Assembly (NCBI GenBank): GCA_002269645.1 | Contig: NIVC01002589.1 | Location: 1-64,000 of the forward strand | Origin: Macrostomum lignano | Lineage: Eukaryota | Reading direction: 5' to 3' | Length of the DNA: 64,000 bases | Shown here: positions 16,894-64,000 of the stretch, piece after piece | Layout of the letters: the number at the start of each line of letters is the position of its first letter | Numbering within the stretch: position 1 is the first letter of the stretch | Position numbers and translations under genes: made by a program | Notes under the pieces: generated by a model | The model's input: the letters and a program-made list of their open reading frames with translations, nothing else | The model's database searches: none | What the model was told of the DNA's origin: nothing

Positions 16894-16906
16894 ATCAGCA
16901 GCCAGC

Positions 16907-20053: not shown

Positions 20054-21400
20054 TCAAGTTGCTGCCTCATCGGTTTGCTGAGCAGTCTTCGGCTCCCGAG
20101 TGTCCAAACTGATGGTCACCGGGCCACAGTTGGTGCTGCTGACTTCTATCATGGCGCCAAACACTCCGGCTTTGATTTTGTCCTCCTGGTAGTCTCGGCG
20201 CATCGATTCCAGGATGTCGGCGTACATCTTCTCGGCCTGGTCGGTGGCCATGGCGCGGCGGAAGTCCGGCTTGTTGCCCTGCCATGTTTTTTGAGAAAGA
20301 AATTGGGTTGGGCAACTGAGGATCTGGGAGGTTGGGCAACTGAGGATCTGGGAGGCTGGGCCAGACCTGAGGATCTGGGATTCTGGCCTAGCAACTGAGA
20401 ATCTGAGGCTGGCTCCCAGCAACTGAGGATCTGGGATTCTGGCCTAGCAACTGAGAATCTGAGGCTGGCTCCCAGCAACTGAGGATCTGGGATTCTGGCC
20501 TAGCAACTGAGAATCTGAGGCTGGCTCCCAGCAACTGAGGATCTGGGATTCTGGCCTAGCAACTGAGAATCTGAGGCTGGCACAGCAACTGAGGATCTGG
20601 GAGGCTGGCACAGCAACTGAGGATCTGGGAGGCTGGCACAGCAACTGAGGATCTGGGAGGCTGGCACAGCAACTGAGGATCTGGGATTCTGGCCTAGCAA
20701 CTGAGGATCTGGGAGGCTGGCATAGCAACTGAGGATCTGGGATTCTGGCCTAGCAACTGAGAATCTGAGGCTGGCTCCCAGCAACTGAGGATCTGGGATT
20801 CTGGCCTAGCAACTGAGAATCTGAGGCTGGCTCCCAGCAACTGAGGATCTGGGATTCTGGCCTAGCAACTGAGAATCTGAGGCTGGCACAGCAACTGAGG
20901 ATCTGGGAGGCTGGCACAGCAACTGAGGATCTGGGAGGCTGGCACAGCAACTGAGGATCTGGGATTCTGGCCTAGCAACTGAGGATCTGGGAGGCTGGCA
21001 TAGCAACTGAGGATCTGGGATTCTGGCCTAGCAACTGAGGATCTGGGAGGCTGGCTCAGAAACTGAGGATCTGGGAGGCTGGCCTAGCAACTGAGAATCT
21101 GGAGAATGGCGGTGGCCCAGCCTGAGTCACCTTGAGCGTCGCATGCAGCGTGAACTGGCTGACGACCAGCACCTCCAAGCCGAGATCCCGGACACTCTTC
21201 ATCCATCGTTTCCCACCCTGTTCGTCATTTTCGTCGAACAGCCGCAGGTTGAGCAACTTCTTGCTCATCCAGTCGGCGTCCTGAGCGGTGTCGGACTGGC
21301 AGATGCCCAGCAGGACGCAGATGCCCCGGCCAATTTCGCCTACGGTGGCCCCATCAACCACAACAGCAGCTCGGCTGACTCGCTGCACGATGGCTCGCAT
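20054..21400 (-). CDS. DTD1: D-aminoacyl-tRNA deacylase 1; exons 21131-21400 and 20054-20278 (164 aa)
   Basis: MRAIVQRV start, SQFTL motif, GNKPDF after splicing and the GPVT (Gly-cisPro) motif. The GT-AG phase-0 intron 20279-21130 joins TLK|GNK. Confidence 0.95.
20305..21118. repeat. Composite 27-29-bp minisatellite (ACTGAGGATCTGGG... family) filling the DTD1 intron
   Basis: Alternating GGAGGCTGGCACAGC / GATTCTGGCCTAGC / AATCTGAGGCTGGCTCCCAGC units with block duplications. Confidence 0.93.
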
Positions 21401-22529: not shown

Positions 22530-23318
22530 AGAAGATCTGGGAGACTGGCGGTGGCCCAGCAAATGAGCATCTGGGAGGCTGGCCCAACAACTGAGCATCT
22601 GGGAGGCTGGCCCAACAACTGAGCATCTGGGAGGCTGGCCCAACAACTGAGGATCTGGGAGGCTGGCCCAACAACTGAGCATCTGGGAGGCTGGCCCAAC
22701 AACTGAGCATCTGGGAGGCTGGCCCAGCAACTGAGCATCTGGGAGGCTGGCCCAACAACTGAGCATCTGGGGGGCTGGCCCAACAACTGAGCATCTGGGA
22801 GGCTGGCCCAACAACTGAGCATCTGGGAGGCTGGCCCAACAACTGAGCATCTGGGAGGCTGATGGCCCAGCAACTGAGCATCTGGGAGGCTGGCCCAACA
22901 ACTGAGCATCTGGGGGCTGGCCCAACAACTGAGCATCTGGGAGGCTGGCCCAACAACTGAGGATCTGGGAGGCTGGCCCAACAACTGAGGATCTGGGAGG
23001 CTGGCCCAACAACTGAGGATCTGGGAGGCTGGCCCAACAACTGAGCATCTGGGGGCTGGCCCAACAACTGAGCATCTGGGAGGCTGGCCCAACAACTGAG
23101 CATCTGGGAGGCTGGCCCAACAACTGAGGATCTGGGAGGCTGGCCCAACAACTGAGGATCTGGGAGGCTGGCCCAACAACTGAGGATCTGGGAGGCTGGC
23201 GGTGGCACAAAAACTGAGGATCTGAGATTTTGGTCTAGCAACAGAGGATCTGAGAGGATGTTCTAGCAACAGAGGATCTGAGAGGATGTTCTAGCAACTG
23301 AGGATCTGGAAGGTTGGC
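22530..23318. repeat. 28-bp minisatellite (ACTGAGSATCTGGGAGGCTGGCCCAACA)
   Basis: About 27 copies; same family as the DTD1 intron and 30505 arrays. Confidence 0.94.
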
Positions 23319-30504: not shown

Positions 30505-30802
30505 AAAAATCTGGGAGGCTGGCCCATGCAGCAACTGAGGATCTGGGAGGCTGGCCCATGCAGCAACTGAGGATCTGGGAGGCTGGCCCATGCAGCAACT
30601 GAGGATCTGGGAGGCTGGCCCAGCAACTGAGGATCTGGGAGGCTGGCCCATGCAGCAACTGAGGATCTGGGAGGCTGGCCCAGCAACTGAGGATCTCTGA
30701 GGCTGGCCTAGCAACTGACACTCTGGGAGGCTGGCACAGCAACTGAGGATCTGAGAGGCTGGCCCAGAAACTGAGGATCTGGGTGGCTGGCCCAGGAACT
30801 GA
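30505..30802. repeat. 28-31-bp minisatellite of the ACTGAGGATCTGGGAGGCTGGCCC family
   Basis: About 10 copies. Confidence 0.92.
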
Positions 30803-31307
30803 GATTATTTTCTCTGTGTATTTTCCTTGTATTTCTATTCTCAGTAGAGTATCAAATAAAAGTTCAGTATAATTTATACCACTTATTGTTGTTGATTGTA
30901 CACTGTATTTTAATTTATCTATTTGTTAGTTTTAGTACACTGTATTCTGTTGCGGTTCAGCCAAGTAAATATAAATATAATGGAGATGTCTATAGCTCAC
31001 AGCTCACTTAATGTCTTCTCAAGTACAACGGCAACTGCAATACACAACAGTGGTCACGATTATAATCTCATTATGCTCTTAAACCTTATCAACAACTTAA
31101 ACTTCCTTTTACGAAATGCTAGAGTTAATTATCTGCAATGTCCCCCTACACTATTGATAGTAGACGCAAGAGAGAAAGTAAACTTGCATTTGTTCGTAAA
31201 TGCAGAATATGAACAACCCAAGAGAGATAGGAAGTGCTCGGTCTTTGAGAACTAAATTGACAATCTCTCTGAGCTTTTGAATCGCAAATGAAGCAAGAAA
31301 ATGTAAA

Positions 31308-36187: not shown

Positions 36188-37669
36188 CTAGCAGGCCGGC
36201 TGCTTGTGGCCGCCAAACCTCAGCGGGCTGGATGCCGCCGCAGCCAGCAGGTGCAGCTTGCTGGCTGCCGACAACGGCGACCAGAGGCGGCGCAAGCGGT
36301 CCTGACAGGCCGGCGCCCGCTGCTGCTTAGCGACCAGGCCGGACTGGCGCAGGGCGCGGAGGCTGTCGCGCGGCGACCGGCGCGCCCGACGATGCCGGGA
36401 TAGCGACAGAGGCGGCGGCGGCTGCGGCTGCTGCGACGCCGGCGGCGGTGGAGTGGCGACTCTCGAAGGCAGCGCCGCGGCCGACTGGGCAAAGCGAAGC
36501 GCCTTCAGCGGCGCCGGCTGGAGCAGCTTTGTCGATGTTGTCGTCGAAGTCTCCGACTGCGGCGGGGTCGGCGCTGGCATCGGCTGAAGCTTCTTTCGGC
36601 CGCCGATCAGCGGCGTCCGCGCCGGGTCGAACCGGGCGAAAGTGGCGCCTCCTTCAACGTCGCCAGATGGAGCCGCCGCCGCCGCTGCTGATGCCGCCGC
36701 TGCCGTCGTTGCTCCGAGGGGGCTGCGGCTGCGGCTGCGACTCGCCAGGCGGGAGACGGCGCGGCCGAAAGCGGCGCGCAGCGCGCTGCCCAACGAAGCG
36801 GCGCGCTGCATGCTGCGCTGCTTTCGTTCCTGCTGTTGCTGCTGAGGATGAAGCTCCGATTGTCCAGCCTCCTCGGCCTCTTCTTCCTCATCGCAGCCGT
36901 ACTCAACAGCGTCGCTATCGGCAACTCCGACGCAGTCGCCGAATTCAACCAGCAGGGCGGCCAGGCGGGCGGAGCGGGCGGCCTCGGTCGGGGTGGCGGC
37001 GCCGCCGGTCAGGCAGGGCCCGAGGCAGACGGCCAGGTTGCCGGCGCTCATCCGGTTGACGTCGGATGCGGCGGCGACGCGGCTGAGGAAGCCGCACAGG
37101 AGGCGCAGCGAGTGCAGCTGGCGGAGCGGCAGCAGGAGGCTGGCCAGGCGGAGCGCGCGGACCCGGCGCTGAAGGCCGAGAGCGTCGGGCAGCAGGGCGG
37201 CCTCCGCCAGCCAGGCGGGCGCCAGTGGCTCCGGCAGCTCTCGCAGCCAGGCCTTCAGCACGGCGCTGACGTCGTGAGCCGGGGAGCCGTCGCGAATGCC
37301 GCAGCCCCGGTCCAGACGCAGGCGGAGGTCGCGCTGGCGGAGCCGGGAGCCTTCGAGGCGGAACAGGCCCTCGCAGCGGAGCCGGTCCTCGGCTGACAAG
37401 TAGCGGCAGCAGGCGGCGAGCACGGCGGGCACCTGGCCGATGCCTTCGACCATCGAGCTCGGCTGGTCCTCCAGACGTCGCCCGAAGCACCGGCTGGCGG
37501 CGGCAGGCGGCGGCGGCGGTGGCGGCAGCTGGCGTCGGCGCCAGTCCAGGCGCAGGCCAAATTGTCGTCGGAGCTCGCGCTCGGCGCCGCCCATCGCCCG
37601 CCGTCGGGACTCCGGCGACATCTGGCCGATGTAGTGCTGGCTGCTGGACTCAACAGTTTGCAGTGGCAT
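36188..37669 (-). CDS. RhoGAP-domain protein, ARHGAP11-like; single coding exon, 493 aa
   Basis: QVPAVLAACCRYL..EGLFRLEGS (arginine finger), DVSAVLKAWLRELPEPL and NRMSAGNLAVCLGP; low-complexity basic C-terminal tail. Confidence 0.88.
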   Translation of the reverse strand: MPLQTVESSSQHYIGQMSPESRRRAMGGAERELRRQFGLRLDWRRRQLPPPPPPPAAASRCFGRRLEDQPSSMVEGIGQVPAVLAACCRYLSAEDRLRCEGLFRLEGSRLRQRDLRLRLDRGCGIRDGSPAHDVSAVLKAWLRELPEPLAPAWLAEAALLPDALGLQRRVRALRLASLLLPLRQLHSLRLLCGFLSRVAAASDVNRMSAGNLAVCLGPCLTGGAATPTEAARSARLAALLVEFGDCVGVADSDAVEYGCDEEEEAEEAGQSELHPQQQQQERKQRSMQRAASLGSALRAAFGRAVSRLASRSRSRSPLGATTAAAASAAAAAAPSGDVEGGATFARFDPARTPLIGGRKKLQPMPAPTPPQSETSTTTSTKLLQPAPLKALRFAQSAAALPSRVATPPPPASQQPQPPPPLSLSRHRRARRSPRDSLRALRQSGLVAKQQRAPACQDRLRRLWSPLSAASKLHLLAAAASSPLRFGGHKQPAC

Positions 37670-37931: not shown

Positions 37932-38160
37932 TCATGCTCTGTCTCATGCTCTGTCTCATGCTCTGTCTCATGCTCTGTCTCATGCTCTGTCTCATGCTCT
38001 GTCTCATGCTCTGTCTCATGCTCTGTCTCATGCTCTGTCTCATGCTCTGTCTCATGCTCTGTCTCATGCTCTGTCTCATGCTCTGTCTCATGCTCTGTCT
38101 CATGCTCTGTCTCATGCTCTGTCTCATGCTCTGTCTCATGCTCTGTCTCATGCTCTGTCT
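37932..38160. repeat. 12-bp repeat (CATGCTCTGTCT)n, probably within a 5'-UTR intron of the RhoGAP gene
   Basis: About 19 perfect copies; minus-strand donor A|GTAAGA at 38698 and acceptor CTCACAG near 37698. Confidence 0.9.
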
Positions 38161-41470: not shown

Positions 41471-42119
41471 CTTGAACATCTCATATACTAGCTCGTAAAA
41501 ATGGTTTGTCGGTAGGTATCTATGTTTTATTGAATGTCACCTGGGTGTGCCTTATCTTTGGATACGCAGCCAAACCGGAATATTTTGTTTTAGAAACCCA
41601 CAGTTTAAGACTCCTTATGGAACAATAAAAATTAAACAGAAATAATCTAAATACCTTTGTAAAATTTGTTTACCGAAACTGGCTTATCGCACCGACACAG
41701 ACTTGTTAAATAGAAGCCGCTCCTTAGTCCCCTTATTGATTAATTAATATTCGCTAATGCTCCAAAGCTTTGGCGGCAGTAACACATTCTTAAGTAGCGG
41801 GGGGAATTTATTGGAAATCTACGACTTTTGATTGACGTCATTCGCAACCCCAGTGCTGCGCTTTTCTAGACTGCTTTGTTGACTTCTGTTACCAGTTGCT
41901 AGTAAAGGATTACTGCTTGTATGGGTTTATAAAGTCGATAATGATTTATGCTTAGTGACTTCTGCACAGCCCTATGTTGTGCCGAGTTTTATCATTTAGA
42001 TGTTTGTAATCCAATACTTGAAAGGCTGGCGGCGGGACTTATCGAGCGAAGGAGGGGAGAGGATCGAGCGAGGGATAAACAATGAGATGCGAAAGAGGAG
42101 ATTGAAATGAAAAATGGGA

Positions 42120-43535
42120 GGGGGAGAGAGAAAGGGTGAGATTAGGAATGAGAGCGGGAGAGAGAGGGTGGGATAAAGAATGAGAGGGGGAGAGAGAGGA
42201 GTTGGGATAAACAATGAGAGGGGAGAGAGAGGGTGGGATAAGAATGAGAGGGGGAGAGAGAGGGTGGGATAAGAATGAGAGCGGGAGAGAGAGGTGGGAT
42301 AAAGAATGAGAGCGGGAGAGAGAGGAGTTGGGATAAACAATGAGAGGGGAGAGAGAGGGTGGGATAAGAATGAGAGGGGGAGAGAGAGGGTGGGATAAGA
42401 ATAAGAGCGGGAGAGAGAGGGTGGAATAAAGAATGAGAGGGGAGAGAGAGGGTGGGATAAAGAATGAGAGGGGAGAGAGAGGGTGGGATAAGAATGAAAG
42501 TGGGAGAGAGAGGGTGGGATAAAGAATGAGAGCGGGAGAGAGAGGGTGGGATAAAGAATGAGAGCGGAGAGAGAGGGTTGGGATAAAGAATGAGAGGGGA
42601 GAGAGAGGAGTTGGGATAAAGAATGAGAGGGGAGAGGGTGGGATAAGAATGAGAGGGGAGAGAGAGGGTGGGATAAAGAATGAGAGGGGAGAGAGAGGAG
42701 TTGGGATAAAGAATGAGAGGGGAGAGAGAGGGTGGGATAAGAATGAGAGGGGAGAGAGAGGGTGGGATAAAGAATGAGAGCGGGAGAGAGAGGAGTTGGG
42801 ATAAAGAATGAGAGCGGGAGAGAGAGGAGTTGGGATAAAGAATGAGAGGGGAGAGAGAGGGTGGGATAAGAATGAGAGGGGAGAGAGAGGGTGGGATAAG
42901 AATGAGAGGGGAGAGAGAGGGTGGGATAAAGAATGAGAGGGGAGAGAGAGGGTGGGATAAAGAATGAGAGCGGGAGAGAGAGGGTGGGATAAAGAATGAG
43001 AGCGGAGAGAGAGGGTTGGGATAAAGAATGAGAGCGGGAGAGAGAGGAGTTGGGATAAAGAATGAGAGGGGAGAGGGTGGGATAAAGAATGAGAGGGGAG
43101 AGAGAGGGTGGGATAAAGAATGAGAGGGGAGAGAGAGGGTGGGATAAGAATGAGAGGGGAGAGAGAGGGTGGGATAAACAATGAGAGCGGGAGAGAGAGG
43201 GTGGGATAAAGAATGAGAGCGGAGAGAGAGGGCTGGGATAAAGAATGAGAGGAGAAGAAGAGGGAGAGATAAGGAATGAGAGCGGGAGAGAGAGGGTGGG
43301 ATAAAGAATGAGAGGGGGAGAGAGAGGAGTTGGGATAAAGAATGAGAGGGGAGAGAGAGGGTGGGATAAACAATGAGAGCGGGAGAGAGAGGGTGGGATA
43401 AAGAATGAGAGGGGAGAGAGAGGGTGGGATAAGGAATGAGAGCGGGAGAGAGGGTGGGATAAAGAATGAGAGGGGGAGAGAGAGGGTGGGATAAAAAGTG
43501 AGAGGGGAGAGAGAGGGTTGGGATAAAGAATGAAA
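42120..43535. repeat. Purine-rich ~30-bp minisatellite (GGGTGGGATAAAGAATGAGAGGGGAGAGAGA)
   Basis: About 45 copies. Confidence 0.92.
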
Positions 43536-44011
43536 GGGCAAATTGCGAGTTGCCATTGATTCCCCCAAACAGAAGCAAAATTCAAACTGAGGCTGCTTGA
43601 GAACTGATCTGAGAAATGCTTTTAGCTCCTATGGCAGAAGTGGCAGCAAACATTTGAGGTCAGGTCGCCTGTTGAAGTCAAATATTCGAGCCGCATGCAT
43701 TAGCCAGGCTGTGGCCGAGCGCGATAAAAGCCTCTTCTCTCTGACTTGTCCCCATCAATGGCGTCAAGTGGCCTTAATTGACACCCCGCTGCGGGCCGGG
43801 ACTGGCATTTGCATTTTTTTGCACATTCGCCACTTTTTCTTTGTCTGATTCTAAGTGGCTGAAATGGAGAAAAAAGTGAAATAGAAGGCGGGAGGCGGTT
43901 TTCCCAGGCTGAGGTGCAACTTGACAGCTTGACTGACATTTGAAGCCTTCTTTGTTGCTAAGGCTGTTTCTGGGATTGTGAATGCGCGAAACTGGCTACT
44001 ACTTAGATGGA

Positions 44012-44992
<981 letters not shown>

Positions 44993-46067
44993 CTCTTACG
45001 ACTGTCTGTGTGTTTAGCGGGACCTGAGTTATGTTAATGCGTTACGTGGACCACGCAATTCCGGTTAAAAAATAGAGTCTGTTTTGACAACGCGAAAGGC
45101 TAGCTAGGGTTATCTTTTTGTTAACTTGACGGAATAGCCAGTTCGGGGAAACTGTGGTGGTTCACTAACTACGTTTTGGGGACCGGGTTAGGTGGACCGC
45201 AAAAAACAGTTGGTTTAGTTAGACCTCTTTCGTTGTAGAAAATTTATTGCTTTAAACTGTTCTTTTGAACTAATTAAAACAGAAATTCTCAAAAAGAACA
45301 GATAAAAGGGTTACGACGTCATTTAATGAAAATATCCCAAGTTCAAACCAATTTATTTAGCATTACTAATCGGGTTAATCGGGTTAAACAAATGTACGAT
45401 CGCATTAGTTAGTTGCGTCGCGTGAATACAAGAAGGTGAATGAAAATAAAGCATTTTGAAAATAAATACCGAATCATATCACATACTAACTGTAAACTCA
45501 TTAAAACTAATTTAGGTCAAAATGTATGCTTCAAATACATGTTAACAAACGTAAAATTCCATTAGTTAAAAAAGGTCATCCGAGTACGAGCCTACAAGAA
45601 GTTGAAGGGCATTTTTAATAACGACAAAAGTTACTGAAACTGAAATTAAATTGATTTGACTACATCAGTCCTATTATACTGAATGAGTTGGTGAGCAATC
45701 ATATGATAAGCCAATCATTTTACCGACTTTCATCTTTTCGTTCACGCAGATGATGGCTTAATCTTCTAATTTTTTCTACGAAATAGTCTCCTGGACCTTC
45801 CCTGCTTCCGTGGTCCGGGACCGCTTCTGTTATTGATCTGTCATTGCCTCTCTCACGAATTTCAGCTTACTCAGCCATCGAATCCGCTTACGTCAGCTCA
45901 GCTCTATGATGAACCTTTCTATATTTCTCGTCAATTAGTGGTTTGAATCTTCTTTTACAGTTCGTTTTAACCTTCATCTCGGTGAAACGCAGTCAGTCTC
46001 GTCGAGCTCAGGCGAACAAAATCAACCACAGGCTCCTACAAAGGTAGAAAATAAAATTAACTGACAA

Positions 46068-49000
46068 TCAAACAGACACAGAAATCTGTTCCAGTTGTGT
46101 CTGTAGGTTATGTGCACCACCTGAGAGCCAGAGCCTCAAACAGACAGAGAAATCTGTTCGAGTTGTGTCTGTGGGTGAGGTGAACCACCTTCTGAGAGCC
46201 AAAGCCTCAAACAGACTGAGAGAGCTGCTTCAGTTGTGTCTATAGGTTATGTGTACCACCTAAGAGCCAGAGCCTCAAACAGACAGAGAAATCTGTTCGA
46301 GTTGTGTCTGTAGGTTAGGTGGACCACCTTCTGAGAGCCAAAGCCTCAAACAGACTGAGAGAGCTACTTCAGTTGTGTCTGTAGGTTATGTGGACCACCT
46401 AAGAGCCAGAGCCTCAAACATACAGAGAAATCTGTTCGAGTTGTGTCTGTAGGTTAGGTGGACCAGCTACTCCACAGCACTTCTAGGCGATAATCTGAGC
46501 CAGGAATCTCCGAGAGCCTCTCGTTACACATCCAGATGTTCTGCCTTGATGCTGGACTAGCTCACTTTCTAGGAATCTGTTCTGATTGCATTCTAACAAA
46601 ATGAAGCATTCTCGGCACTAAACTTTCTCGGCGGCTCTGAGATCCAGAGCCTCAAACAGACAGAAATCTGTTCGAGTTGTGTCTGTAGGTTAGGTGGACC
46701 AGCTACTCCACAGCACTTCTAGGCGATAATCTGAGCCAGGAATCTCCGAGAGCCTCTCTTTACACATTCAGATGTTCTGCCTTGATGCTGGACTAGCTCA
46801 CTTTCTAGGAATCTGTTCTGATTGCATTCTAACATACTGAAGCATTCTCGGCACTAAACTTTCTCGGCGGCTCTGAGAGCCAGAGCCTCAAACAGACAGA
46901 GAAATCTGTTCGAGTTGTTTCTGTAGGTTAGGTGGACCAGCTACTGAGAGCCAAATCCTCAAACAGACTGAGAGAGCTGCTTCAGTTGTGTCTGTAGGTT
47001 ATGTGGACCACCTAAGAGCCAGAGCCCTAAACAGACAGAGAAATCTGTTCGAGTTGTGTCTGTAGGTTAGGCGGACCAGCTACTCCACAGCACTTCTAGG
47101 CGATAATCTGAGCCAGGAATCTCCGAGAGCCTCTCCTTACACATCCAGATGTTCTGCCTTGATGCTGGACTAGCTCACTTTCTAGGAATCTGTTCTGATT
47201 GCATTCTAACAAACTGAAGCATTCTCGGCACTAAACTTTCTCGGCGGCTCTAAGAGCCAGAGCCTCAAACAGACAGAGAAATCTGTTCGAGTTGTTTCTG
47301 TAGGTTAGGTGGACCAGCTATTCTACAGCACTTCTAGGCGATAATCTGAGCCAGGAATCTCCGAGAGCCTCTCCTTACACATCCAGATGTTCTGCCTTGA
47401 TGCTGGACTAGCTCACTTTCTAGGAATCTGTTCTGATTGCATTCTAACAAACTGAAGCATTCTCGGCACTAAACTTTCTCGGCGGCTCTAAGAGCCAGAG
47501 CCTCAAACAGACAGAGAAATCTGTTCGAGTTGTTTCTGTAGGTTAGGTGGACCAGCTATTCTACAGCACTTCTAGGCGATAATCTGAGCCAGGAATCTCC
47601 GAGAGCCTCTCCTTACACATCCAGATGTTCTGCCTTGATGCTGGACTAGCTCACTTTCTAGGAATCTGTTCTGATTGCATTCTAACATACTGAAGCATTC
47701 TCGGCACTAAACTTTCTCGGCGGCTCTGAGAGCCAGAGCCTCAAACAGACAGAGAAATCTGTTCGAGTTGTTTCTGTAGGTTAGGTGGACCAGCTATTCT
47801 ACAGCACTTCTGGGCGATAATCTGAGCCAGGAATCTGCGAGAGCCTCTCTTTACACATTCAGATGTTCTGCCTTGATGCTGGACTAGCTCACTTTCTAGG
47901 AATCTGTTCTGATTGCATTCTAACATACTGAAGCATTCTCGGCACTAAGCTTTCTCGGCGGCTCTGAGAGCCAGAGCCCTAAACAGACAGAAATCTGTTC
48001 GAGTTGTTTCTGTAGGTTAGGTGGACCAGCTACTCCACAGCACTTCTAGGCGATAATCTGAGCCAGGAATCTCCGAGAGCCTCTCTTTACACATTCAGAT
48101 GTTCTGCCTTGATGCTGGACTAGCTCACTTTCTAGGAATCTGTTCTGATTGCATTCTAACATACTGAAGCATTCTCGGCACTAAACTTTCTCGGCGGCTC
48201 TGAGAGCCAGAGCCTTAAACAGACAGAGAAATCTGTTCGAGTTGTGTCTGTAGGTTAGGTGGACCAGCTACTGAGAGCCAAATCCTCAAACAGACTGAGA
48301 GAGCTGCTTCAGTTGTGTCTGTAGGTTATGTGGACCACCTAAGAGCCAGAGCCCTAAACAGACAGAGAAATCTGTTCGAGTTGTGTCTGTTGGTTAGGCG
48401 GACCAGCTACTCCACAGCACTTCTAGGCGATAATCTGAGCCAGGAATCTCCGAGAGCCTCTCCTTACACATCCAGATGTTCTGCCTTGATGCTGGACTAG
48501 CTCACTTTCTAGGAATCTGTTCTGATTGCATTCTAACAAACTGAAGCATTCTCGGCACTAAACTTTCTCGGCGGCTCTAAGAGCCAGAGCCTCAAACAGA
48601 CAGAGAAATCTGTTCGAGTTGTTTCTGTAGGTTAGGTGGACCAGCTATTCTACAGCACTTCTAGGCGATAATCTGAGCCAGGAATCTCCGAGAGCCTCTC
48701 TTTACACATTCAGATGTTCTGCCTTGATGCTGGACTAGCTCACTTTCTAGGAATCTGTTCTGATTGCATTCTAACATACTGAAGCATTCTCGGCACTAAA
48801 CTTTCTCGGCGGCTCTGAGAGCCAGAGCCTCAAACAGACAGAGAAATCTGTTCGAGTTGTTTCTGTAGGTTAGGTGGACCAGCTATTCTACAGCACTTCT
48901 GGGCGATAATCTGAGCCAGGAATCTCCGAGAGCCTCTCTTTACACATTCAGATGTTCTGCCTTGATGCTGGACTAGCTCACTTTCTAGGAATCTGTTCTG

Positions 49001-52000
49001 ATTGCATTCTAACATACTGAAGCATTCTCGGCACTAAGCTTTCTCGGCGGCTCTGAGAGCCAGAGCCCTAAACAGACAGAAATCTGTTCGAGTTGTGTCT
49101 GTAGGTTAGGTGGACCAGCTACTCCACAGCACTTCTAGGCGATAATCTGAGCCAGGAATCTCCGAGAGCCTCTCTTTACACATTCAGATGTTCTGCCTTG
49201 ATGCTGGACTAGCTCACTTTCTAGGAATCTGTTCTGATTGCATTCTAACATACTGAAGCATTCTCGGCACTAAACTTTCTCGGCGGCTCTGAGAGCCAGA
49301 GCCTTAAACAGACAGAGAAATCTGTTCGAGTTGTGTCTGTAGGTTAGGTGGACCAGCTACTGAGAGCCAAATCCTCAAACAGACTGAGAGAGCTGCTTCA
49401 GTTGTGTCTGTAGGTTATGTAAACCACCTAAGAGCCAGAGCCCTAAACAGACAGAGAAATCTGTTCGAGTTGTGTCTGTAGGTTAGGCGGACCAGCTACT
49501 CCACAGCACTTCTAGGCGATAATCTGAGCCAGGAATCTCCGAGAGCCTCTCCTTACACATCCAGATGTTCTGCCTTGATGCTGGACTAGCTCACTTTCTA
49601 GGAATCTGTTCTGATTGCATTCTAACAAACTGAAGCATTCTCGGCACTAAACTTTCTCGGCGGCTCTAAGAGCCAGAGCCTCAAACAGACAGAGAAATCT
49701 GTTCGAGTTGTTTCTGTAGGTTAGGTGGACCAGCTATTCTACAGCACTTCTAGGCGATAATCTGAGCCAGGAATCTCCGAGAGCCTCTCTTTACACATTC
49801 AGATGTTCTGCCTTGATGCTGGACTAGCTCACTTTCTAGGAATCTGTTCTGATTGCATTCTAACATACTGAAGCATTCTCGGCACTAAACTTTCTCGGCG
49901 GCTCTGAGAGCCAGAGCCTCAAACAGACAGAGAAATCTGTTCGAGTTGTTTCTGTAGGTTAGGTGGACCAGCTATTCTACAGCACTTCTGGGCGATAATC
50001 TGAGCCAGGAATCTCCGAGAGCCTCTCTTTACACATTCAGATGTTCTGCCTTGATGCTGGACTAGCTCACTTTCTAGGAATCTGTTCTGATTGCATTCTA
50101 ACATACTGAAGCATTCTCGGCACTAAGCTTTCTCGGCGGCTCTGAGAGCCAGAGCCCTAAACAGACAGAAATCTGTTCGAGTTGTGTCTGTAGGTTAGGT
50201 GGACCAGCTACTCCACAGCACTTCTAGGCGATAATCTGAGCCAGGAATCTCCGAGAGCCTCTCTTTACACATTCAGATGTTCTGCCTTGATGCTGGACTA
50301 GCTCACTTTCTAGGAATCTGTTCTGATTGCATTCTAACATACTGAAGCATTCTCGGCACTAAACTTTCTCGGCGGCTCTGAGAGCCAGAGCCTTAAACAG
50401 ACAGAGAAATCTGTTCGAGTTGTGTCTGTAGGTTAGGTGGACCAGCTACTGAGAGCCAAATCCTCAAACAGACTGAGAGAGCTGCTTCAGTTGTGTCTGT
50501 AGGTTATGTAAACCACCTAAGAGCCAGAGCCCTAAACAGACAGAGAAATCTGTTCGAGTTGTGTCTGTAGGTTAGGCGGACCAGCTACTCCACAGCACTT
50601 CTAGGCGATAATCTGAGCCAGGAATCTCCGAGAGCCTCTCCTTACACATCCAGATGTTCTGCCTTGATGCTGGACTAGCTCACTTTCTAGGAATCTGTTC
50701 TGATTGCATTCTAACAAACTGAAGCATTCTCGGCACTAAACTTTCTCGGCGGCTCTAAGAGCCAGAGCCTCAAACAGACAGAGAAATCTGTTCGAGTTGT
50801 TTCTGTAGGTTAGGTGGACCAGCTATTCTACAGCACTTCTAGGCGATAATCTGAGCCAGGAATCTCCGAGAGCCTCTCCTTACACATCCAGATGTTCTGC
50901 CTTGATGCTGGACTAGCTCACTTTCTAGGAATCTGTTCTGATTGCATTCTAACATACTGAAGCATTCTCGGCACTAAACTTTCTCGGCGGCTCTGAGAGC
51001 CAGAGCCTTAAACAGACAGAGAAATCTGTTCGAGTTGTGTCTGTAGGTTAGGTGGACCAGCTACTGAGAGCCAAATCCTCAAACAGACTGAGAGAGCTGC
51101 TTCAGTTGTGTCTGTAGGTTATGTGGACCACCTAAGAGCCAGAGCCCTAAACAGACAGAGAAATCTGTTCGAGTTGTGTCTGTAGGTTAGGCGGACCAGC
51201 TACTCCACAGCACTTCTAGGCGATAATCTGAGCCAGGAATCTCCGAGAGCCTCTCCTTACACATCCAGATGTTCTGCCTTGATGCTGGACTAGCTCACTT
51301 TCTAGGAATCTGTTCTGATTGCATTCTAACAAACTGAAGCATTCTCGGCACTAAACTTTCTCGGCGGCTCTAAGAGCCAGAGCCTCAAACAGACAGAGAA
51401 ATCTGTTCGAGTTGTTTCTGTAGGTTAGGTGGACCAGCTATTCTACAGCACTTCTAGGCGATAATCTGAGCCAGGAATCTCCGAGAGCCTCTCCTTACAC
51501 ATCCAGATGTTCTGCCTTGATGCTGGACTAGCTCACTTTCTAGGAATCTGTTCTGATTGCATTCTAACATACTGAAGCATTCTCGGCACTAAACTTTCTC
51601 GGCGGCTCTGAGAGCCAGAGCCTCAAACAGACAGAGAAATCTGTTCGAGTTGTTTCTGTAGGTTAGGTGGACCAGCTATTCTACAGCACTTCTGGGCGAT
51701 AATCTGAGCCAGGAATCTCCGAGAGCCTCTCTTTACACATTCAGATGTTCTGCCTTGATGCTGGACTAGCTCACTTTCTAGGAATCTGTTCTGATTGCAT
51801 TCTAACATACTGAAGCATTCTCGGCACTAAGCTTTCTCGGCGGCTCTGAGAGCCAGAGCCCTAAACAGACAGAGAAATCTGTTCGAGTTGTTTCTGTAGG
51901 TTAGGTGGACCAGCTACTCCACAGCACTTCTAGGCGATAATCTGAGCCAGGAATCTCCGAGAGCCTCTCTTTACACATTCAGATGTTCTGCCTTGATGCT

Positions 52001-55000
52001 GGACTAGCTCACTTTCTAGGAATCTGTTCTGATTGCATTCTAACATACTGAAGCATTCTCGGCACTAAACTTTCTCGGCGGCTCTGAGAGCCAGAGCCTC
52101 AAACAGACAGAGAAATCTGTTCGAGTTGTTTCTGTAGGTTAGGTGGACCAGCTATTCTACAGCACTTCTAGGCGATAATCTGAGCCAGGAATCTCCGAGA
52201 GCCTCTCCTTACACATCCAGATGTTCTGCCTTGATGCTGGACTAGCTCACTTTCTAGGAATCTGTTCTGATTGCATTCTAACATACTGAAGCATTCTCGG
52301 CACTAAACTTTCTCGGCGGCTCTGAGAGCCAGAGCCTCAAACAGACAGAGAAATCTGTTCGAGTTGTTTCTGTAGGTTAGGTGGACCAGCTATTCTACAG
52401 CACTTCTGGGCGATAATCTGAGCCAGGAATCTCCGAGAGCCTCTCTTTACACATTCAGATGTTCTGCCTTGATGCTGGACTAGCTCACTTTCTAGGAATC
52501 TGTTCTGATTGCATTCTAACATACTGAAGCATTCTCGGCACTAAGCTTTCTCGGCGGCTCTGAGAGCCAGAGCCCTAAACAGACAGAGAATCTGTTCGAG
52601 TTGTTTCTGTAGGTTAGGTGGACCAGCTACTCCACAGCACTTCTAGGCGATAATCTGAGCCAGGAATCTCCGAGAGCCTCTCTTTACACATTCAGATGTT
52701 CTGCCTTGATGCTGGACTAGCTCACTTTCTAGGAATCTGTTCTGATTGCATTCTAACATACTGAAGCATTCTCGGCACTAAACTTTCTCGGCGGCTCTGA
52801 GAGCCAGAGCCTTAAACAGACAGAGAAATCTGTTCGAGTTGTGTCTGTAGGTTAGGTGGACCAGCTACTGAGAGCCAAATCCTCAAACAGACTGAGAGAG
52901 CTGCTTCAGTTGTGTCTGTAGGTTATGTGGACCACCTAAGAGCCAGAGCCTAAACAGACAGAGAAATCTGTTCGAGTTGTGTCTGTAGGTTAGGCGGACC
53001 AGCTACTCCACAGCACTTCTAGGCGATAATCTGAGCCAGGAATCTCCGAGAGCCTCTCCTTACACATCCAGATGTTCTGCCTTGATGCTGGACTAGCTCA
53101 CTTTCTAGGAATATGTTCTGATTGCATTCTAATAAACTGAAGCATTCTCGGCACTAAACTTTCTCGGCGGCTCTGAGATCCAGAGCCTCAAACAGACAGA
53201 AATCTGTTCGAGTTGTGTCTGCAGGTTAGGTGGACCAGCTACTCCAAAGCACTTCTAGGCGATAATCTGAGCCAGGAATCTCCGAGAGCCTCTCTTTACA
53301 CATTCAGATGTTCTGCCTTGATGCTGGACTAGCTCACTTTCTAGGAATCTGTTCTGATTGCATTCTAACATACTGAAGCATTCTCGGCACTAAACTTTCT
53401 CGGCGGCTCTGAGAGCCAGAGCCTTAAACAGACAGAGAAATCTGTTCGAGTTGTGTCTGTAGGTTAGGTGGACCAGCTACTGAAAGCCAAATCCTCAAAC
53501 AGACTGAGAGAGCTGCTTCAGTTGTGTCTGTAGGTTATGTGGACCACCTAAGAGCCAGAGCCTCAAACAGACAGAGAAATCTGTTCGAGTTGTTTCTGTA
53601 GGTTAGGTGGACCAGCTATTCTACAGCACTTCTAGGCGATAATCTGAGCCAGGAATCTCCGAGAGCCTCTCTTTACACATTCAGATGTTCTGCCTTGATG
53701 CTGGACTAGCTCACTTTCTAGGAATCTGTTCTGATTGCATTCTAACATACTGAAGCATTCTCGGCACTAAACTTTCTCGGCGGCTCTGAGAGCCAGAGCC
53801 TCAAACAGACAGAGAAATCTGTTCGAGTTGTTCTGTAGGTTAGGTGGACCAGCTATTCTACAGCACTTCTGGGCGATAATCTGAGCCAGGAATCTCCGAG
53901 AGCCTCTCTTACACATTCAGATGTTCTGCCTTGATGCTGGACTAGCTCACTTTCTAGGAATCTGTTCTGATTGCATTCTAACATACTGAAGCATTCTCGG
54001 CACTAAGCTTTCTCGGCGGCTCTGAGAGCCAGAGCCCTAAACAGACAGAAATCTGTTCGAGTTGTTCTGTAGGTTAGGTGGACCAGCTACTCCACAGCAC
54101 TTCTAGGCGATAATCTGAGCCAGGAATCTCCGAGAGCCTTTCTTTACACATTCAGATGTTCTGCCTTGATGCTGGACTAGCTCACTTTCTAGGAATCTGT
54201 TCTGATTGCATTCTAACATACTGAAGCATTCTCGGCACTAAACTTTCTCGGCGGCTCTGAGAGCCAGAGCCTTAAACAGACAGAGAAATCTGTTCGAGTT
54301 GTGTCTGTAGGTTAGGTGGACCAGCTACTGAGAGCCAAATCCTCAAACAGACTGAGAGAGCTGCTTCAGTTGTGTCTGTAGGTTATGTGGACCACCTAAG
54401 AGCCAGAGCCCTAAACAGACAGAGAAATCTGTTCGAGTTGTGTCTGTAGGTTAGGCGGACCAGCTACTCCACAGCACTTCTAGGCGATAATCTGAGCCAG
54501 GAATCTCCGAGAGCCTCTCCTTACACATCCAGATGTTCTGCCTTGATGCTGGACTAGCTCACTTTCTAGGAATATGTTCTGATTGCATTCTAATAAACTG
54601 AAGCATTCTCGGCACTAAACTTTCTCGGCGGCTCTGAGATCCAGAGCCTCAAACAGACAGAAATCTGTTCGAGTTGTGTCTGCAGGTTAGGCGGACCAGC
54701 TACTCCACAGCACTTCTAGGCGATAATCTGAGCCAGGAGTCTCCGAGAGACTTTCGTTACACATCCAGATGTTCTGCCTTGATGCTGGACTAGCTCACTT
54801 TCTAGGAATATGTTCTGATTGCATTCTAACAAAATGAAGCATTCTCGGCACTAAACTTTCTCGGCGGCTCTGAGAGCCAGAGCCTTAAACAGACAGAGAA
54901 ATCTGTTCGAGTTGTGTCTGTAGGTTAGGTGGACCACCTTCTGAGAGCCAAAGCCTCAAACAGACTGAGAGAGCTGATTCAGTTGTGTCTGTAGGTTAGG

Positions 55001-55015
55001 TGGACCAGCTTCTCT
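46068..55015. repeat. 9-kb complex satellite of 238(236)-bp monomers interspersed with 71+68-bp pairs; higher-order repeats of 1089 and 615 bp
   Basis: GAGCCAGAG markers at 47254, 47492 and 47730 (238 apart). The recurring 61-aa pseudo-ORF is spaced 1089, 1089, 1704 (=1089+615) and 714 (=3x238). Confidence 0.97.
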
Positions 55016-56402
55016 ACAGCAATTGAGTTGCAGGCCTTGCAGCTAGCTACTTTGAGATCATCAAACGAAACTCACTTTTCTGGACTCGGTGTCGACGGAT
55101 TTGCGAGCGATTTGCGATTTTCACCAGGCGATGCGGCTTCTTCGATTTCGCAGTGGCTTTTTGTGACGGTGTTTTTTTAGTTTTTATTTTAGGCCTGGCG
55201 TCCTTTTTTGCGGGTCATCATATCTTGGTTGTAGATTACAGTTTTTGGCACAATAAATTTATATATGGATGAAACTTGGAGTAAGGATTAACATTAGACC
55301 TATTAAGTATAAAAAAACGTTCTAATCTATACAATTGCAGTCCTTTAGAGTTGTATAGTATGGATTATAAGTACTTTCTTTTAAACTGTCTGTGTCTGGT
55401 CTCACTACGCCATGGTTTACGTGGACCACCCGCTTAGACATTATATATCCCTCTCTCCACTGTCTTACCTTCAGAACGCTTGCGGGTTTCCTATTGGCTG
55501 CGGTCGGTCCCATTGTTGGGGTGGATCTATCCTCCTAAGTGTTAACCAGCCAATTATAGATAGGGAGGTCTGTCTGTCTGTCTGTTCCAACCCTATACTC
55601 CTGCACATGTGTTTACGTGGACCAAACAGACAGTGAGTGTTAGGCTGACTGTTAATGCGTTCTTAGTTTTACTGGGACCGCAATCAAGTCGACCTTTTGC
55701 TAGAGAGTCAGAGACCCGATCGCTAGCTAAAAGGCCCTTCTTAATTGCGTCCTCTTGATCAAATCTTTTGCATGTACATGTATGAATTGTCCTTTTCAAT
55801 TAGGTAAATTGCATCTTCAACTTTGCACTTGAAAGGCTGCAGCTTAGGATCTTCTTCTTCCAACATTGGAGGAGGATAGAACAGGATATCCCATAGTGTT
55901 TAGGATAGAATTGGCAAGCACTTAATTCATGAAGTTGCTATTTTCTTCTTGTGTAATGGTAGAGCCTCAGAAATTCGCATTTACACAGTGTGGCTATCAA
56001 GGACCACTGGGAGTTCTTGAGAAGTCATTGAAGAATACTGTTTAGGCTTCACTTAAATATCTTTCTTGTCTCGGAGTCTTTATCGTTTGATCTGGTTAGC
56101 GAATTGGATTTCTTTACGTTGGTGTCTTACTCTGTGAGTCTGTGCTCAGAGTACGATACCGGAATTGCTGGAACTGAGCTAATTAAATGGAGTTTAAAGT
56201 TTACTGTATCAAATTCATTTCGCATACGAGGTTTCAGAATTTTTAATTAACCTGCGTACCTACTTGAATGTCAAAGAACTGAACGCATATTGTTTTAAAG
56301 CCAGTAGCGGTCATAAATGATGCCAACATAGCCCTTTGTTCGTAAGGTAATGATCTGTAAAAAATTCAGTTTTGCATCGAATCTATGCTTAATAACTGCT
56401 AT

Positions 56403-56444
56403 ACACAAACAGACACAAACAGACACAAACAGACACAAACAGAC
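56403..56444. repeat. 10-bp repeat (ACACAAACAG)x4
   Basis: Direct reading. Confidence 0.8.
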
Positions 56445-56749
56445 GATTTTCGAAAAATTTTCTAAAATTTTTCGGTTTACGTGGACCAGACTCGCTCGTT
56501 TAGGTAGACCAGGCTGGAGGTCCAGCTAAACTGAAATGCAAATAACTTTGGAAAAAACCATGCTAGACATCCCAAAATTGCTTAAGCCTTTCTTGACCCG
56601 CCTGACATTAATGTGAGATCCTCATCAACGTCTTAACCCCACCAGAGACAAAATTATTTGGTGGTCCACCTAAGTGGTCTACCTACACCGGTGGTCCAGC
56701 TAACGAGGCTACTGAACTTCCAAAAAGTCCACGTAAACACACAGACAGT

Positions 56750-64000
<7,251 letters not shown>

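What the first reader, a model, noticed from the sequence alone, without database searches (positions are those of the whole stretch)
45001..56749. 11.7-kb satellite-carrying element with inverted termini, embedded between (ACAG)n tracts
Seen: 23-bp inverted ends (20/23 identical) directly abut or lie within about 10 nt of (ACAG)n tracts that have the same orientation on both sides. GTGGACC motifs face inward at both ends (45041, 45186 on +; 56663, 56727 on -), and a 9-kb satellite lies inside. Established: Helentron-derived DINE-1/HINE and pearl-like elements combine subterminal inverted repeats, a (GTCY)n microsatellite and expandable central tandem repeats that seed satellite DNA; some DNA transposons (e.g. 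Dada) target microsatellites. Inference: an undescribed non-autonomous family that either targets (ACAG)n or carries and extends it, acting as a vehicle that generates and disperses both microsatellite and complex satellite. No TSD or transposase is visible, and part of the right terminus is itself microsatellite-like.
Basis: partly seen in the sequence, partly recalled or inferred. Interest (0 to 1): 0.85.

Follow-up and report, generated by a model that had tools for sequence, protein, structure and literature searches.

The report
Helitron-like repeat cluster seeding a satellite
The 11.7-kb stretch is real, but it looks like a cluster of small non-coding Helitron-type (Helentron/HINE, "pearl"-like) transposon pieces whose 13-base end motif sits in every unit of a 9-kb satellite next to huge (ACAG)n tracts: an extreme example of a known way satellites are born, not a new kind of element.

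Summary
There are 23-nt inverted ends (20/23), an 8.9-kb satellite, flanking same-orientation (ACAG)n tracts, no TSD and no coding capacity.

Three points change the picture:
- Half of the "TIR" (CTGTCTGTGTG) is ordinary microsatellite, with 59 more copies in the right tract. The other half is one copy of a 13-nt motif, GTTTAsGTGGACC, with a palindromic core.
- The motif occurs 64 times, only inside 45012-56738: 59 on + (including every satellite unit) and 5 on - (56519-56738).
- The right end pairs better with a perfect 12-nt partner 250 bp away (56475) than with the left end. This 314-nt unit folds at z = -4.3. Its second repeat is followed at once by the window's longest perfect palindrome. 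That is the canonical Helentron/Helitron2 layout.

The modules match HINE/DINE-1 and pearl/DTC84 elements: inverted flank motifs, core repeats carrying a palindrome, and an ACRG/GTCY microsatellite. Both repeat modules are greatly over-expanded here.

Mobility, copy number, TT target and an autonomous partner could not be tested, because no related genome was reachable. Whether the element targets (ACAG)n or carries it is unresolved, but carrying fits better. Verdict: probable new member of a known kind; moderate interest.

The parts
44015..44992 (+). Left (ACAG)n tract: 245 units, 90% matches. Interruptions are ATAA, ACAA and ACACTAAG.
   Evidence: The ACA[CT]TAAG interruption is shared with the right tract and with the reverse-oriented intron tract at 3973-4223.
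45001..45023 (+). Left 23-nt inverted end: an 11-12-nt inverted microsatellite fragment (CTGTCTGTGTG) followed by a degenerate motif copy (GTTTAGCGGGACC, 45012-45024).
   Evidence: This is the only + strand copy of CTGTCTGTGTG in the window.
45012..45225 (+). Left subterminal motif cluster: 13-mers at 45012, 45040, 45186 and 45213, all on +. The copy at 45040 contains TT + ACGTGGACCACG (45044-45055), a palindrome CGTGG-A-CCACG.
   Evidence: The region does not fold better than shuffles (z = -0.5).
45226..46067 (.). Unique non-coding spacer between the left cluster and the array.
   Evidence: No other copy in the window, no homology to the monomer, no Pfam hit.
46068..55013 (+). 8.9-kb complex satellite. 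Short units are 68/71 bp. Long units are 236-238 bp and consist of a short unit plus a roughly 170-bp insert. The pattern is [238 x n, 71, 68]. Every unit carries GGTTAGGTGGACC or GGTTATGTGGACC preceded by TGTGTCTGTA.
   Evidence: Long units are 96.8% identical on average and short units 86.6%. Blocks of 0.8-1.5 kb are duplicated at 97-98.7% identity. The unit core aligns to the right 'TIR' at 17/21 with one gap (P about 0.006-0.008).
55385..55427 (+). Module M1: CTGTCTGTGTCTG, about 20 nt, then a perfect GTTTACGTGGACC (55415-55427).
55568..55690 (+). Module M2: (GTCT)4.5, 25 nt, a perfect GTTTACGTGGACC (55611-55623), then AAACAGACAG. It shares TGTTAATGCGTT and ACTGGGACCGCAAT with the left end (45031-45062), with indels.
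   Evidence: The indel alignment of M2 with the left end was made by eye. Gapped alignments over longer stretches are not above the null.
56403..56444 (+). (ACACAAACAG)4.2, an ACAG-derived repeat in the same orientation as the big tracts. It flanks the small unit on its left.
   Evidence: It is 80-86% similar to stretches inside both big tracts.
56436..56738 (-). Best-defined unit, an HLE2/HINE-like mini-element of about 300 bp read on the minus strand. Left repeat GTTTACGTGGAC (56738->56727). Four motif copies at 56726, 56693, 56676 and 56663. About 130 bp of unique sequence. Motif pair 56519-56531 / 56498-56510. Right repeat GTCCACGTAAAC (56486->56475). Stem-loop (56474->56451). Short tail.
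   Evidence: The 314-nt stretch 56436-56749 folds at -48.9 kcal/mol against -31.6 +/- 4.0 for shuffles (z = -4.3, 0 of 100 shuffles as good). The 12-bp repeats pair with each other and the stem-loop follows the right repeat.
56451..56474 (.). Perfect 24-nt palindrome CGAAAAATTTTCTAAAATTTTTCG (11-bp stem, 2-nt loop) that abuts the 13-mer at 56475.
   Evidence: It is the longest perfect short-loop palindrome in the whole 64-kb window. The local fold has z = -3.3.
56727..56749 (-). Right 23-nt inverted end: the motif copy GTTTACGTGGACT plus CACACAGACAGT, which is continuous with the right microsatellite.
56750..64000 (+). Right (ACAG)n tract, at least 7.25 kb, running off the window. The part nearest the element is dominated by ACAC interruptions, which make the same CACACAGACAG as the outer 'TIR'.

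Best explanation
The locus is a cluster of non-autonomous Helitron-like elements of the HLE2 type (Helentron/Helitron2; called HINE, DINE-1-like or pearl-like when non-coding). It lies in an unsampled invertebrate genome and has two over-grown repeat modules.

The family's signature is a 12-13-nt repeat, (G)TTT-ACGTGGACC, with a palindromic core of the CGTGG-A-CCACG / GGTGG-A-CCACC type. I take this to be the site the rolling-circle transposase recognises (inference).

Shown:
- The motif is confined to 45012-56738. It sits on the + strand from the left end through the whole satellite, and on the - strand only in the last 220 bp.
- One complete small unit exists on the minus strand (about 56738 to 56436). 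It has perfect 12-nt inverted repeats, and a strong stem-loop follows the second repeat directly.
- Every satellite unit contains the motif together with a TGTCTGT stub.
- A (CTGT)n stretch lies 0-25 nt upstream of the motif in four separate copies, at about 2.5, 2, 4.5 and more than 1800 units.

Inferred:
- The ACRG/GTCY microsatellite is a carried module of the family, as in DINE-1 and pearl/DTC84. It expanded by slippage and unequal exchange to at least 7 kb on the right.
- The satellite arose in place from the element's own motif-bearing segment. It grew by unequal crossing-over of multi-unit blocks, as the 97-98.7% block duplications suggest.
- The 11.7-kb span between the inverted 23-mers is therefore a composite of at least 3-4 same-family ends plus the array. 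It is not demonstrably one transposition unit.
- The left and right 23-mers look alike because each is 'microsatellite stub + motif'.
For: Motif distribution:
- The PWM finds 64 sites, all within 45012-56738: 59 on +, and 5 on - at 56519-56726. There are none in the other 52 kb.
- The 13-mer at up to 2 mismatches gives 49 hits against 0.4 expected.

The small unit:
- It folds at z = -4.3, with the repeats paired and the stem-loop directly after the right repeat.
- That palindrome is the longest perfect one in the window.
- This is the layout described for canonical HLE2: 12-16-nt inverted repeats, a 3' stem-loop after the right repeat, and T|T insertion (PMC11417382).
- It also matches mite and mosquito HINEs: 12-15-bp palindromic subTIRs 2-4 nt from a T-rich 5' end, a palindrome near the 3' end and no TSD (PMC4067079).
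- TT or TTT precedes ACGTGGAC in five copies.
- The core ACGTGGACCACG is 11/12 identical to the published HINE-Mo-6 subTIR ACGTGAACCACGT.

Modular match to pearl/DTC84 and Cg_HINE (PMC3879986; PMC7492417):
- Flanks with short inverted repeats.
- Core repeats in one orientation, each carrying a conserved palindrome.
- An adjacent tetranucleotide ACGG/ACAG/ACTG (= GTCY) microsatellite.

Other points:
- The unit core aligns to the right 'TIR' at 17/21, P about 0.006-0.008.
- The element is non-coding.
- No TSD is visible.
- Array growth was recent: 96.8% unit identity and 97-98.7% block duplicates.
Against: - Only one locus could be examined. No second copy, empty site, TT target or Rep/helicase partner was seen. 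Mobility is therefore unproven.
- The similarity to published subTIRs is only suggestive. It is 2 mismatches in 13, and about 0.5 such hits per window are expected by chance. Palindromes of this type are a small sequence space.
- The microsatellite lies upstream of the motif and outside the inverted ends. In DINE-1 and Cg_HINE it lies inside the left flank, after the 5' subTIR.
- Apart from the 24-nt palindrome, the putative hairpins next to other motif copies do not fold better than shuffles.
- The arms share no extended homology with each other or with the monomer.
- The left (ACAG)n tract has no convincing motif on its far side. There is only a weak 10/13 match at 44001.
- The same window makes many unrelated tandem arrays with no transposon-like flanks.
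Confidence: 0.5

Rival explanations
1. One reading: one 11.7-kb non-autonomous transposon bounded by the 23-nt inverted ends. It inserted into, and therefore split, a pre-existing (ACAG)n tract, so it is a microsatellite-targeting family. It carries the satellite as cargo.
For: - The 23-mers are unique in the window and 20/23 identical.
- The flanking tracts have the same orientation.
- The motif copies in the first 225 bp and in the last 220 bp face inward.
- The small unit 56436-56738 shows the same pattern: ACAG-type repeats of the same orientation on both sides, (ACACAAACAG)4 at 56403-56444 and the big tract.
- Removing the small unit at its T runs would leave an almost continuous (TGTGTCTGTT)n/(CTGT)n repeat. 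This comes from direct reading and is an inference.
Against: - The right end has a perfect 12/12 partner 250 bp away, with a significant fold.
- Outside the microsatellite-like 12 nt, the left-right similarity is marginal.
- Joining the two flanks does not restore a clean tract. ACACTCTTACG / AGA remain.
- The two tracts differ in their interruption spectrum next to the junctions. The left has ATAA, ACAA and TAAG types. The first 2 kb of the right tract is almost only ACAC.
- Three more left-end-like modules sit inside the right arm.
- Short (CTGT)2-4.5 stubs accompany internal motif copies. This argues for a carried module rather than a target.
Confidence: 0.15
2. Not a mobile element. It is a local, self-evolving satellite and microsatellite domain. 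The 13-nt motif is simply the conserved core of the satellite, perhaps a host-protein box. The few inverted copies at the right edge come from a small local inversion or fold-back replication error.
For: - 57% of the window, and 44% of the part outside this locus, is tandem repeat of many unrelated families with no transposon-like flanks.
- No second copy of any arm sequence is present.
- No TSD and no coding remnant are present.
- The 'TIR' is an inverted copy of the unit core plus microsatellite.
- The window also holds another large inverted duplication of minisatellite arrays (9386-10495 against 17610-16501, 97.4%). Inversion and duplication of repeats therefore does occur here.
Against: - The 314-nt unit has a very specific arrangement. 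Perfect 12-nt inverted repeats are combined with the window's longest palindrome, placed exactly after one repeat. This is hard to obtain from a random inversion.
- Perfect motif copies (M1, M2, M3) sit in unique sequence away from the array.
- The modules match a well-described transposon architecture.
Confidence: 0.2
3. A MITE-like derivative of a cut-and-paste DNA transposon, for example a family with several subterminal transposase-binding repeats such as CACTA, hAT or P-like, or a Foldback-like element. Its subterminal repeats expanded into the satellite.
For: - Several motif copies cluster in each arm in opposite orientation, as with subterminal binding sites.
- The small unit is a fold-back structure.
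- MITE-internal repeats expanding into satellites are documented. This is discussed in PMC3879986 and PMC7492417.
Against: - No TSD of any length is seen at the 23-mer boundaries or at the 12-mer boundaries of the small unit.
- The stem-loop abutting one repeat and the T run before the motif are HLE2 traits.
- The ends do not resemble any superfamily terminus that I can recall. This rests on my own knowledge and was not tested against Repbase or Dfam.
Confidence: 0.15

Closest known systems
HINE / DINE-1-like non-autonomous Helentrons, HLE2 group (Thomas et al. 2014, PMC4067079; HELIANO, PMC11417382)
   Same: - Non-coding.
- 12-13-nt inverted repeats with a palindromic core, as in the mite and Culex HINE subTIRs.
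- A T run directly before the 5' repeat.
- A strong stem-loop right after the second repeat in the 314-nt unit.
- No TSD.
- Central tandem repeats in one orientation.
- An associated GTCY (= ACRG) microsatellite.
- A core 11/12 identical to the HINE-Mo-6 subTIR.
   Different: - The microsatellite lies outside and upstream of the repeat instead of inside the left flank.
- The motif is reiterated many times, including in every central repeat.
- The array (8.9 kb, about 50 units) and the microsatellite (at least 7 kb) are far larger than usual.
- The TT target, the copy number and a Rep/Hel/endonuclease partner are untested.
pearl family and DTC84 of bivalves (Gaffney et al. 2003; Satovic & Plohl 2013, PMC3879986)
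   Same: - Modular order: L flank + core repeats + tetranucleotide ACGG/ACAG/ACTG microsatellite (+ R flank).
- Flanks hold 10-20-bp inverted repeats.
- Each core repeat carries a conserved palindrome. In DTC84 it is TTGTCCGGACAA. Here it is AGGTGGACCACCT.
- The core repeats are related to satellites.
   Different: - DTC84 has 1-5 core repeats of about 160 bp and 2-13 microsatellite units. Here there are about 50 units of 68-238 bp and more than 1800 microsatellite units.
- About 1.7 kb with extra modules separates the array from the microsatellite.
- The R flank beyond the right tract, if there is one, lies outside the window.
- No sequence similarity was tested, because no pearl or DTC84 sequences were on hand.
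Cg_HINE elements of Crassostrea gigas (Vojvoda Zeljko et al. 2020, PMC7492417)
   Same: - Satellite-like arrays are embedded between a left flank (subTIR, complementary IR, GTCY-type microsatellite) and a right flank (subTIR + palindrome).
- Array orientation is fixed.
- There is no TSD.
- They are proposed as seeds of classical satellites.
   Different: - Cg_HINE arrays are mostly 5 monomers or fewer (29 at most) of 140-180 bp.
- Their right flank is about 60 bp, directly after the last repeat. Here 0.84-1.7 kb of unique sequence separates the array from the motif clusters.
- There, many dispersed copies and empty sites document mobility. Here there are none.
Tandem or composite Helitron arrays produced by termination bypass (cited in PMC4067079 for Myotis and Bombyx)
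   Same: Several same-orientation end modules (L, M1, M2, M3 and every satellite unit) lie next to one opposite end.
   Different: The units here are not whole elements and share only the motif. No evidence ties the array to replication read-through rather than to unequal exchange.

Membership tests
HLE2 non-autonomous element (HINE / Helentron-associated) | Short (about 11-18 nt) terminal or subterminal inverted repeats | tested here: met
   GTTTACGTGGAC at 56738->56727 pairs with 56475-56486 at 12/12, and they pair in the fold. A weaker pair exists with 45012-45024.
HLE2 non-autonomous element (HINE / Helentron-associated) | [quoted passage not shown] | tested here: met
   This holds for the 314-nt unit only. 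A perfect 11-bp-stem palindrome at 56451-56474 abuts the repeat and is the longest in the window. It does not hold for the 11.7-kb span read on +, because pure (ACAG)n follows the right end. Read on -, that span has only a weak hairpin at the left junction (z = -1.3).
HLE2 non-autonomous element (HINE / Helentron-associated) | 5' repeat 2-4 nt from a T-rich terminus; insertion between T and T; no TSD | tested here: inconclusive
   TT or TTT directly precedes ACGTGGAC in five copies, and no TSD is visible. However, TTTA is also conserved in internal copies, and no empty site is available to fix the true ends.
HLE2 non-autonomous element (HINE / Helentron-associated) | No coding capacity | tested here: met
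HLE2 non-autonomous element (HINE / Helentron-associated) | Dispersed multi-copy family that shares its ends with an autonomous Rep/helicase (with or without endonuclease) element | not testable with these tools
   There is no other copy in the window. The TIR and satellite probes gave 0 hits in metagenome contigs. The same species is absent from the protein collections. No Repbase or Dfam library was available.
DINE-1 / Cg_HINE subtype | GTCY microsatellite inside the left flank, downstream of the 5' subTIR + IR and upstream of the central repeats | tested here: not met
   The big tracts lie outside the inverted 23-mers. The (CTGT)n stubs lie upstream of the motif. The feature would be met only if the true 5' flank lies beyond 64000, on the minus strand, which cannot be seen.
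pearl / DTC84 type | L flank + one-orientation core repeats with a conserved palindrome + ACRG tetranucleotide microsatellite + R flank with inverted repeats | tested here: inconclusive
   On the + strand the order is L arm, then array, then (ACAG)n. Every unit has the palindromic core. But 1.7 kb with extra modules intervenes, and the R flank would lie off the window.
Cut-and-paste MITE (DDE superfamilies) | Target-site duplication flanking the terminal inverted repeats | tested here: not met
   No direct repeat of 2-10 nt is found at the 45001/56749 boundaries or at the 56475/56738 boundaries (direct reading).

The most novel reading that the evidence does not exclude
The 13-nt motif is the recognition and nicking site of a Helentron-type Rep. 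Because it sits in every satellite unit, the 8.9-kb array would have been produced by the rolling-circle machinery itself, through repeated re-initiation or failed termination at reiterated end signals, rather than by ordinary unequal exchange. In addition, the family would home to TT-bearing variant units of (CTGT)n-type microsatellites. The result would be a lineage that both seeks microsatellites and spawns satellites, in an animal group where such elements have not been described.
Probability: 0.12. Interest if true: 0.65.

Novelty: new member of a known kind. Interest (0 to 1): 0.35.

Why it matters
If it is confirmed as a mobile family, this locus would capture the transposon-to-satellite transition at an unusually advanced stage. 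The element's own end motif is embedded in each unit of a young, homogeneous 9-kb array. The family-typical GTCY/ACRG microsatellite has grown from a few units (at M1, M2 and the left end) to more than 1800 units at one copy.

[quoted passage not shown] It would also extend pearl/HINE-like elements to a poorly sampled invertebrate lineage. The closest ABCC relatives of this genome are only 53-67% identical.

It does not reveal a new class of element or mechanism. The concept is already established in Drosophila, bivalves and mites.

Tried and rejected
- Other genomic copies:
  - An exact look-up of the window's 608-aa ORF found nothing, and neither did a homology search with it.
  - The ABCC exon has only distant relatives, so the species is not in the collections.
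  - A viral-contig scan gave 5 chance singletons with no second motif and no (ACAG)n.
- Extended homology between the arms (L against R, M1, M2, M3) and between the array flanks and the monomer was not above shuffled controls. Only short motifs are shared.
- Hairpins next to M2, in the monomer, at the left junction and in the right cluster are not significant. The left cluster as a fold-back is not significant either.
- I tested the left tract as the microsatellite of a further HINE running leftwards through the 31-bp array at 42072-43538. No 3' motif or palindrome was found near 42000. Rejected.
- A literature string search for the motif returned only primers. The Cg_HINE subTIR table was illegible in the stored supplement.
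- Rfam gave no hit over the whole window, so there is no tRNA- or SINE-type origin.
- Pfam gave no hit on the longest stop-free stretches of the arms and array.
- The other 18 arrays of the window have no inverted repeats above chance in their 200-bp flanks.
- I ran no further search on pseudo-ORFs of the element, because the chance of success was negligible.

Full report
**Context.** The window is animal nuclear DNA.
- It carries large exons of an ABCC/MRP transporter (11-5735, +). The exons are about 55% identical to human ABCC2. The best database relatives are only 53-67% identical; the named ones are spiralians (gastropods and an annelid).
- It also carries a D-Tyr-tRNA deacylase exon, a RhoGAP ORF and an intronless 608-aa Methyltransf_22 ORF. 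That ORF has no relative at E <= 1e-10 and no exact record.
- The species and its near relatives are therefore absent from the collections I could reach.
- 57% of the window is tandem repeat. In the 44 kb outside the finding the figure is 44%.

**The observation.**
- The two 23-mers (45001-45023 on +, 56727-56749 on -) are the only matches in the window, with none expected by chance.
- (ACAG)n tracts of 978 bp and at least 7.25 kb flank them in the same orientation.
- An 8.9-kb array of 68/71-bp and 236-238-bp units fills 46068-55013.
- There is no TSD and no coding capacity.

**What the '23-nt TIR' is made of.** It has two parts.
- The outer CTGTCTGTGTG is a normal variant unit of the right microsatellite. 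It has 59 further copies on that strand in the right tract and 4 in the left tract. The left end holds its only + strand copy.
- The inner part is one instance of a 13-nt motif, GTTTAsGTGGACC.
- Without the microsatellite-like part, the left-right inverted similarity is marginal (P = 0.04-0.08).
- The real signal is the motif itself. It gives 49 hits at up to 2 mismatches against 0.4 expected.
- With a PWM there are 64 sites, all within 45012-56738 and none in the other 52 kb.
- Orientation switches only once. All 59 sites from 45012 to 56498 are on +. The five from 56519 to 56726 are on -.
- Every satellite unit carries the motif preceded by TGTGTCTGTA. The right 'TIR' aligns to this unit core at 17/21 with one gap (P about 0.006-0.008).
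- The core of the motif is palindromic: CGTGG-A-CCACG at 45045-45055, and AGGTGG-A-CCACCT in the short units.

Three perfect + copies of GTTTACGTGGACC lie in the right arm, at 55415 (M1), 55611 (M2) and 56475 (M3).
- M1 and M2 are preceded by CTGTCTGTGTCTG and by (GTCT)4.5, at about 20 and 25 nt.
- M2 shares TGTTAATGCGTT and ACTGGGACCGCAAT with the left end (for the 12-mer; the indel alignment is by eye).
- M3 is directly preceded by a perfect 24-nt palindrome (56451-56474). This is the longest perfect short-loop palindrome in the 64 kb.
- M3 is followed by a motif pair in inverted orientation (56498 / 56519).

**The best-defined unit.** On the minus strand, 56738 to about 56436 reads as follows:
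- 12-nt repeat GTTTACGTGGAC;
- four motif copies;
- about 130 bp of unique sequence;
- an inverted motif pair;
- 12-nt repeat GTCCACGTAAAC;
- a stem-loop;
- a short tail.

The 314-nt stretch folds at -48.9 kcal/mol against -31.6 +/- 4.0 for shuffles (z = -4.3). The two 12-mers pair, and the stem-loop comes immediately after the second one.

This is the published layout of canonical HLE2 elements (Helentron/Helitron2): 12-16-nt inverted repeats, a 3' stem-loop after the right repeat, and insertion between T and T (PMC11417382). It is also the layout of HINEs: 12-15-bp palindromic subTIRs 2-4 nt from a T-rich 5' end, a palindrome near the 3' end, no TSD, often with microsatellites or tandem repeats (PMC4067079).

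TT or TTT precedes ACGTGGAC in five copies. The core ACGTGGACCACG is 11/12 identical to the HINE-Mo-6 subTIR ACGTGAACCACGT. By the window-wide test, however, a match with 2 mismatches in 13 is not rare, so I treat this as a lead and not as proof.

**The microsatellite.**
- GTCY is the reverse complement of ACRG. The microsatellites of pearl and DTC84 are ACGG, ACGA, ACTG and ACAG (PMC3879986). Those of Cg_HINE are GTCY, GTCC and GTCK (PMC7492417). (ACAG)n is thus the family-typical module.
- In motif orientation, a (CTGT)n stretch lies 0-25 nt upstream of four separate TTTAsGkGGAC copies. The lengths are about 2.5 units (left end), about 2 (M1), 4.5 (M2) and more than 1800 (right end).
- That pattern is what a carried module that occasionally runs away would give. 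It is not what a target would give.
- The first 2 kb of the right tract is dominated by ACAC interruptions, which make the same CACACAGACAG as next to the motif. The left tract has ATAA, ACAA and ACACTAAG. The two tracts therefore do not look like freshly separated halves of one array.
- An odd interruption, ACA[CT]TAAG, is shared by the left tract, the distal right tract and a reverse-oriented (TGTC)n in an ABCC intron (3973-4223) that has no motif nearby. These tracts are related in some way that I cannot explain from one window.
- For the left tract, the only link to the family on its far side is a weak 10/13 motif-like site at 44001-44013.
- In favour of targeting, the small unit is itself flanked on both sides by ACAG-type repeats of the same orientation. 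Removing it at its T runs would leave an almost continuous (TGTGTCTGTT)n/(CTGT)n repeat (inference).
- I leave targeting against carrying open, with carrying favoured.

**The satellite.**
- Long units are 96.8% identical on average and short units 86.6%.
- Blocks of 0.8-1.5 kb recur at 97-98.7% identity. This points to recent growth by multi-unit duplication.
- The array flanks are not degenerate monomers.
- The other 18 tandem arrays in the window have no motif and no inverted flanks. This genome makes arrays freely without such elements, which tempers the 'vehicle' claim.
- The motif shared between the units and the element ends is nevertheless specific.

**Comparison and membership.**
- In how it works, the locus resembles HINE/DINE-1, pearl/DTC84 and Cg_HINE.
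- Met: short inverted repeats, the 3' stem-loop (small unit only), non-coding, no TSD, one-orientation core repeats with a palindrome, and an ACRG microsatellite.
- Not met: the microsatellite position of DINE-1/Cg_HINE, where it lies inside the left flank.
- Untestable: copy number, empty sites, the T|T target and a RepHel partner.
- I therefore call it HLE2/HINE-like, a probable new member of a known kind. It is not a proven member and not a new class.

**Verdict.** The feature is real and structured. The Helentron/pearl analogy is good. The single 11.7-kb element and the (ACAG)n-targeting ideas are not supported by what can be seen. Interest is moderate (0.35), because it is an extreme and instructive example of a known route from transposon to satellite.

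Noticed in passing
window 9386-10495 and 16501-17988: A large inverted duplication. A 56-bp array followed by a 71-bp array on the left is mirrored, at 97.4% identity over 1110 bp, by the same arrays in reverse order and orientation on the right. Together they enclose an AT-rich (30-36% GC) non-coding core of about 5.6 kb. It looks like a Foldback-like element or a large palindrome.
   Followed up: partly
window 20312-21102, 22552-23308, 30509-30803: One 28-bp minisatellite family (GCAACTGAGGATCTGGGAGGCTGGCCCA) occurs at three separate sites, all in + orientation and 81-85% identical. The sites lie around and within the D-Tyr-tRNA deacylase-like gene region, so this is a dispersed minisatellite.
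   Followed up: no
window 3973-4223: A (TGTC)n tract starts 7 nt after an ABCC exon's GT splice-donor-like site. It has a regular CTTAGTGT interruption, the reverse complement of the ACACTAAG seen in the big tracts. The (ACAG)n tracts therefore seem to form a related family that also occurs without the 13-nt motif.
   Followed up: partly
window 28333-30159 (-): An intronless 608-aa ORF with a Methyltransf_22/FkbM-type domain (Pfam E = 7e-17). It has no hit at E <= 1e-10 among 5.8 billion proteins and no exact record.
   Followed up: partly
window 1-5735 (+): The ABCC/MRP gene has one exon covering about 363 aa of TMD2, an intron-poor structure. Its introns are filled with 18-32-bp minisatellites. 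The best relatives are only 53-67% identical; the named ones are gastropods and the annelid Ridgeia. This points to an unsampled invertebrate lineage.
   Followed up: partly
window 37932-38160: A perfectly homogeneous 12-bp repeat, (TCATGCTCTGTC)19, with 100% matches. It lies next to the 66%-GC RhoGAP-like ORF at 36188-37669.
   Followed up: no
window 44001-44013: ACTTAGATGGATT abuts the left edge of the left (ACAG)n tract. It matches the motif variant ACTTAGGTGGACC at 10/13, and all three differences are transitions. It may be a decayed motif copy, but the PWM score is low (4.1 bits) and about 100 sites score as well elsewhere.
   Followed up: partly
whole window: Tandem repeats make up 57% of the 64 kb, in about 25 unrelated families with periods of 4-306 bp. 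None of the 18 larger arrays tested outside the finding has inverted repeats above chance in its 200-bp flanks.
   Followed up: yes
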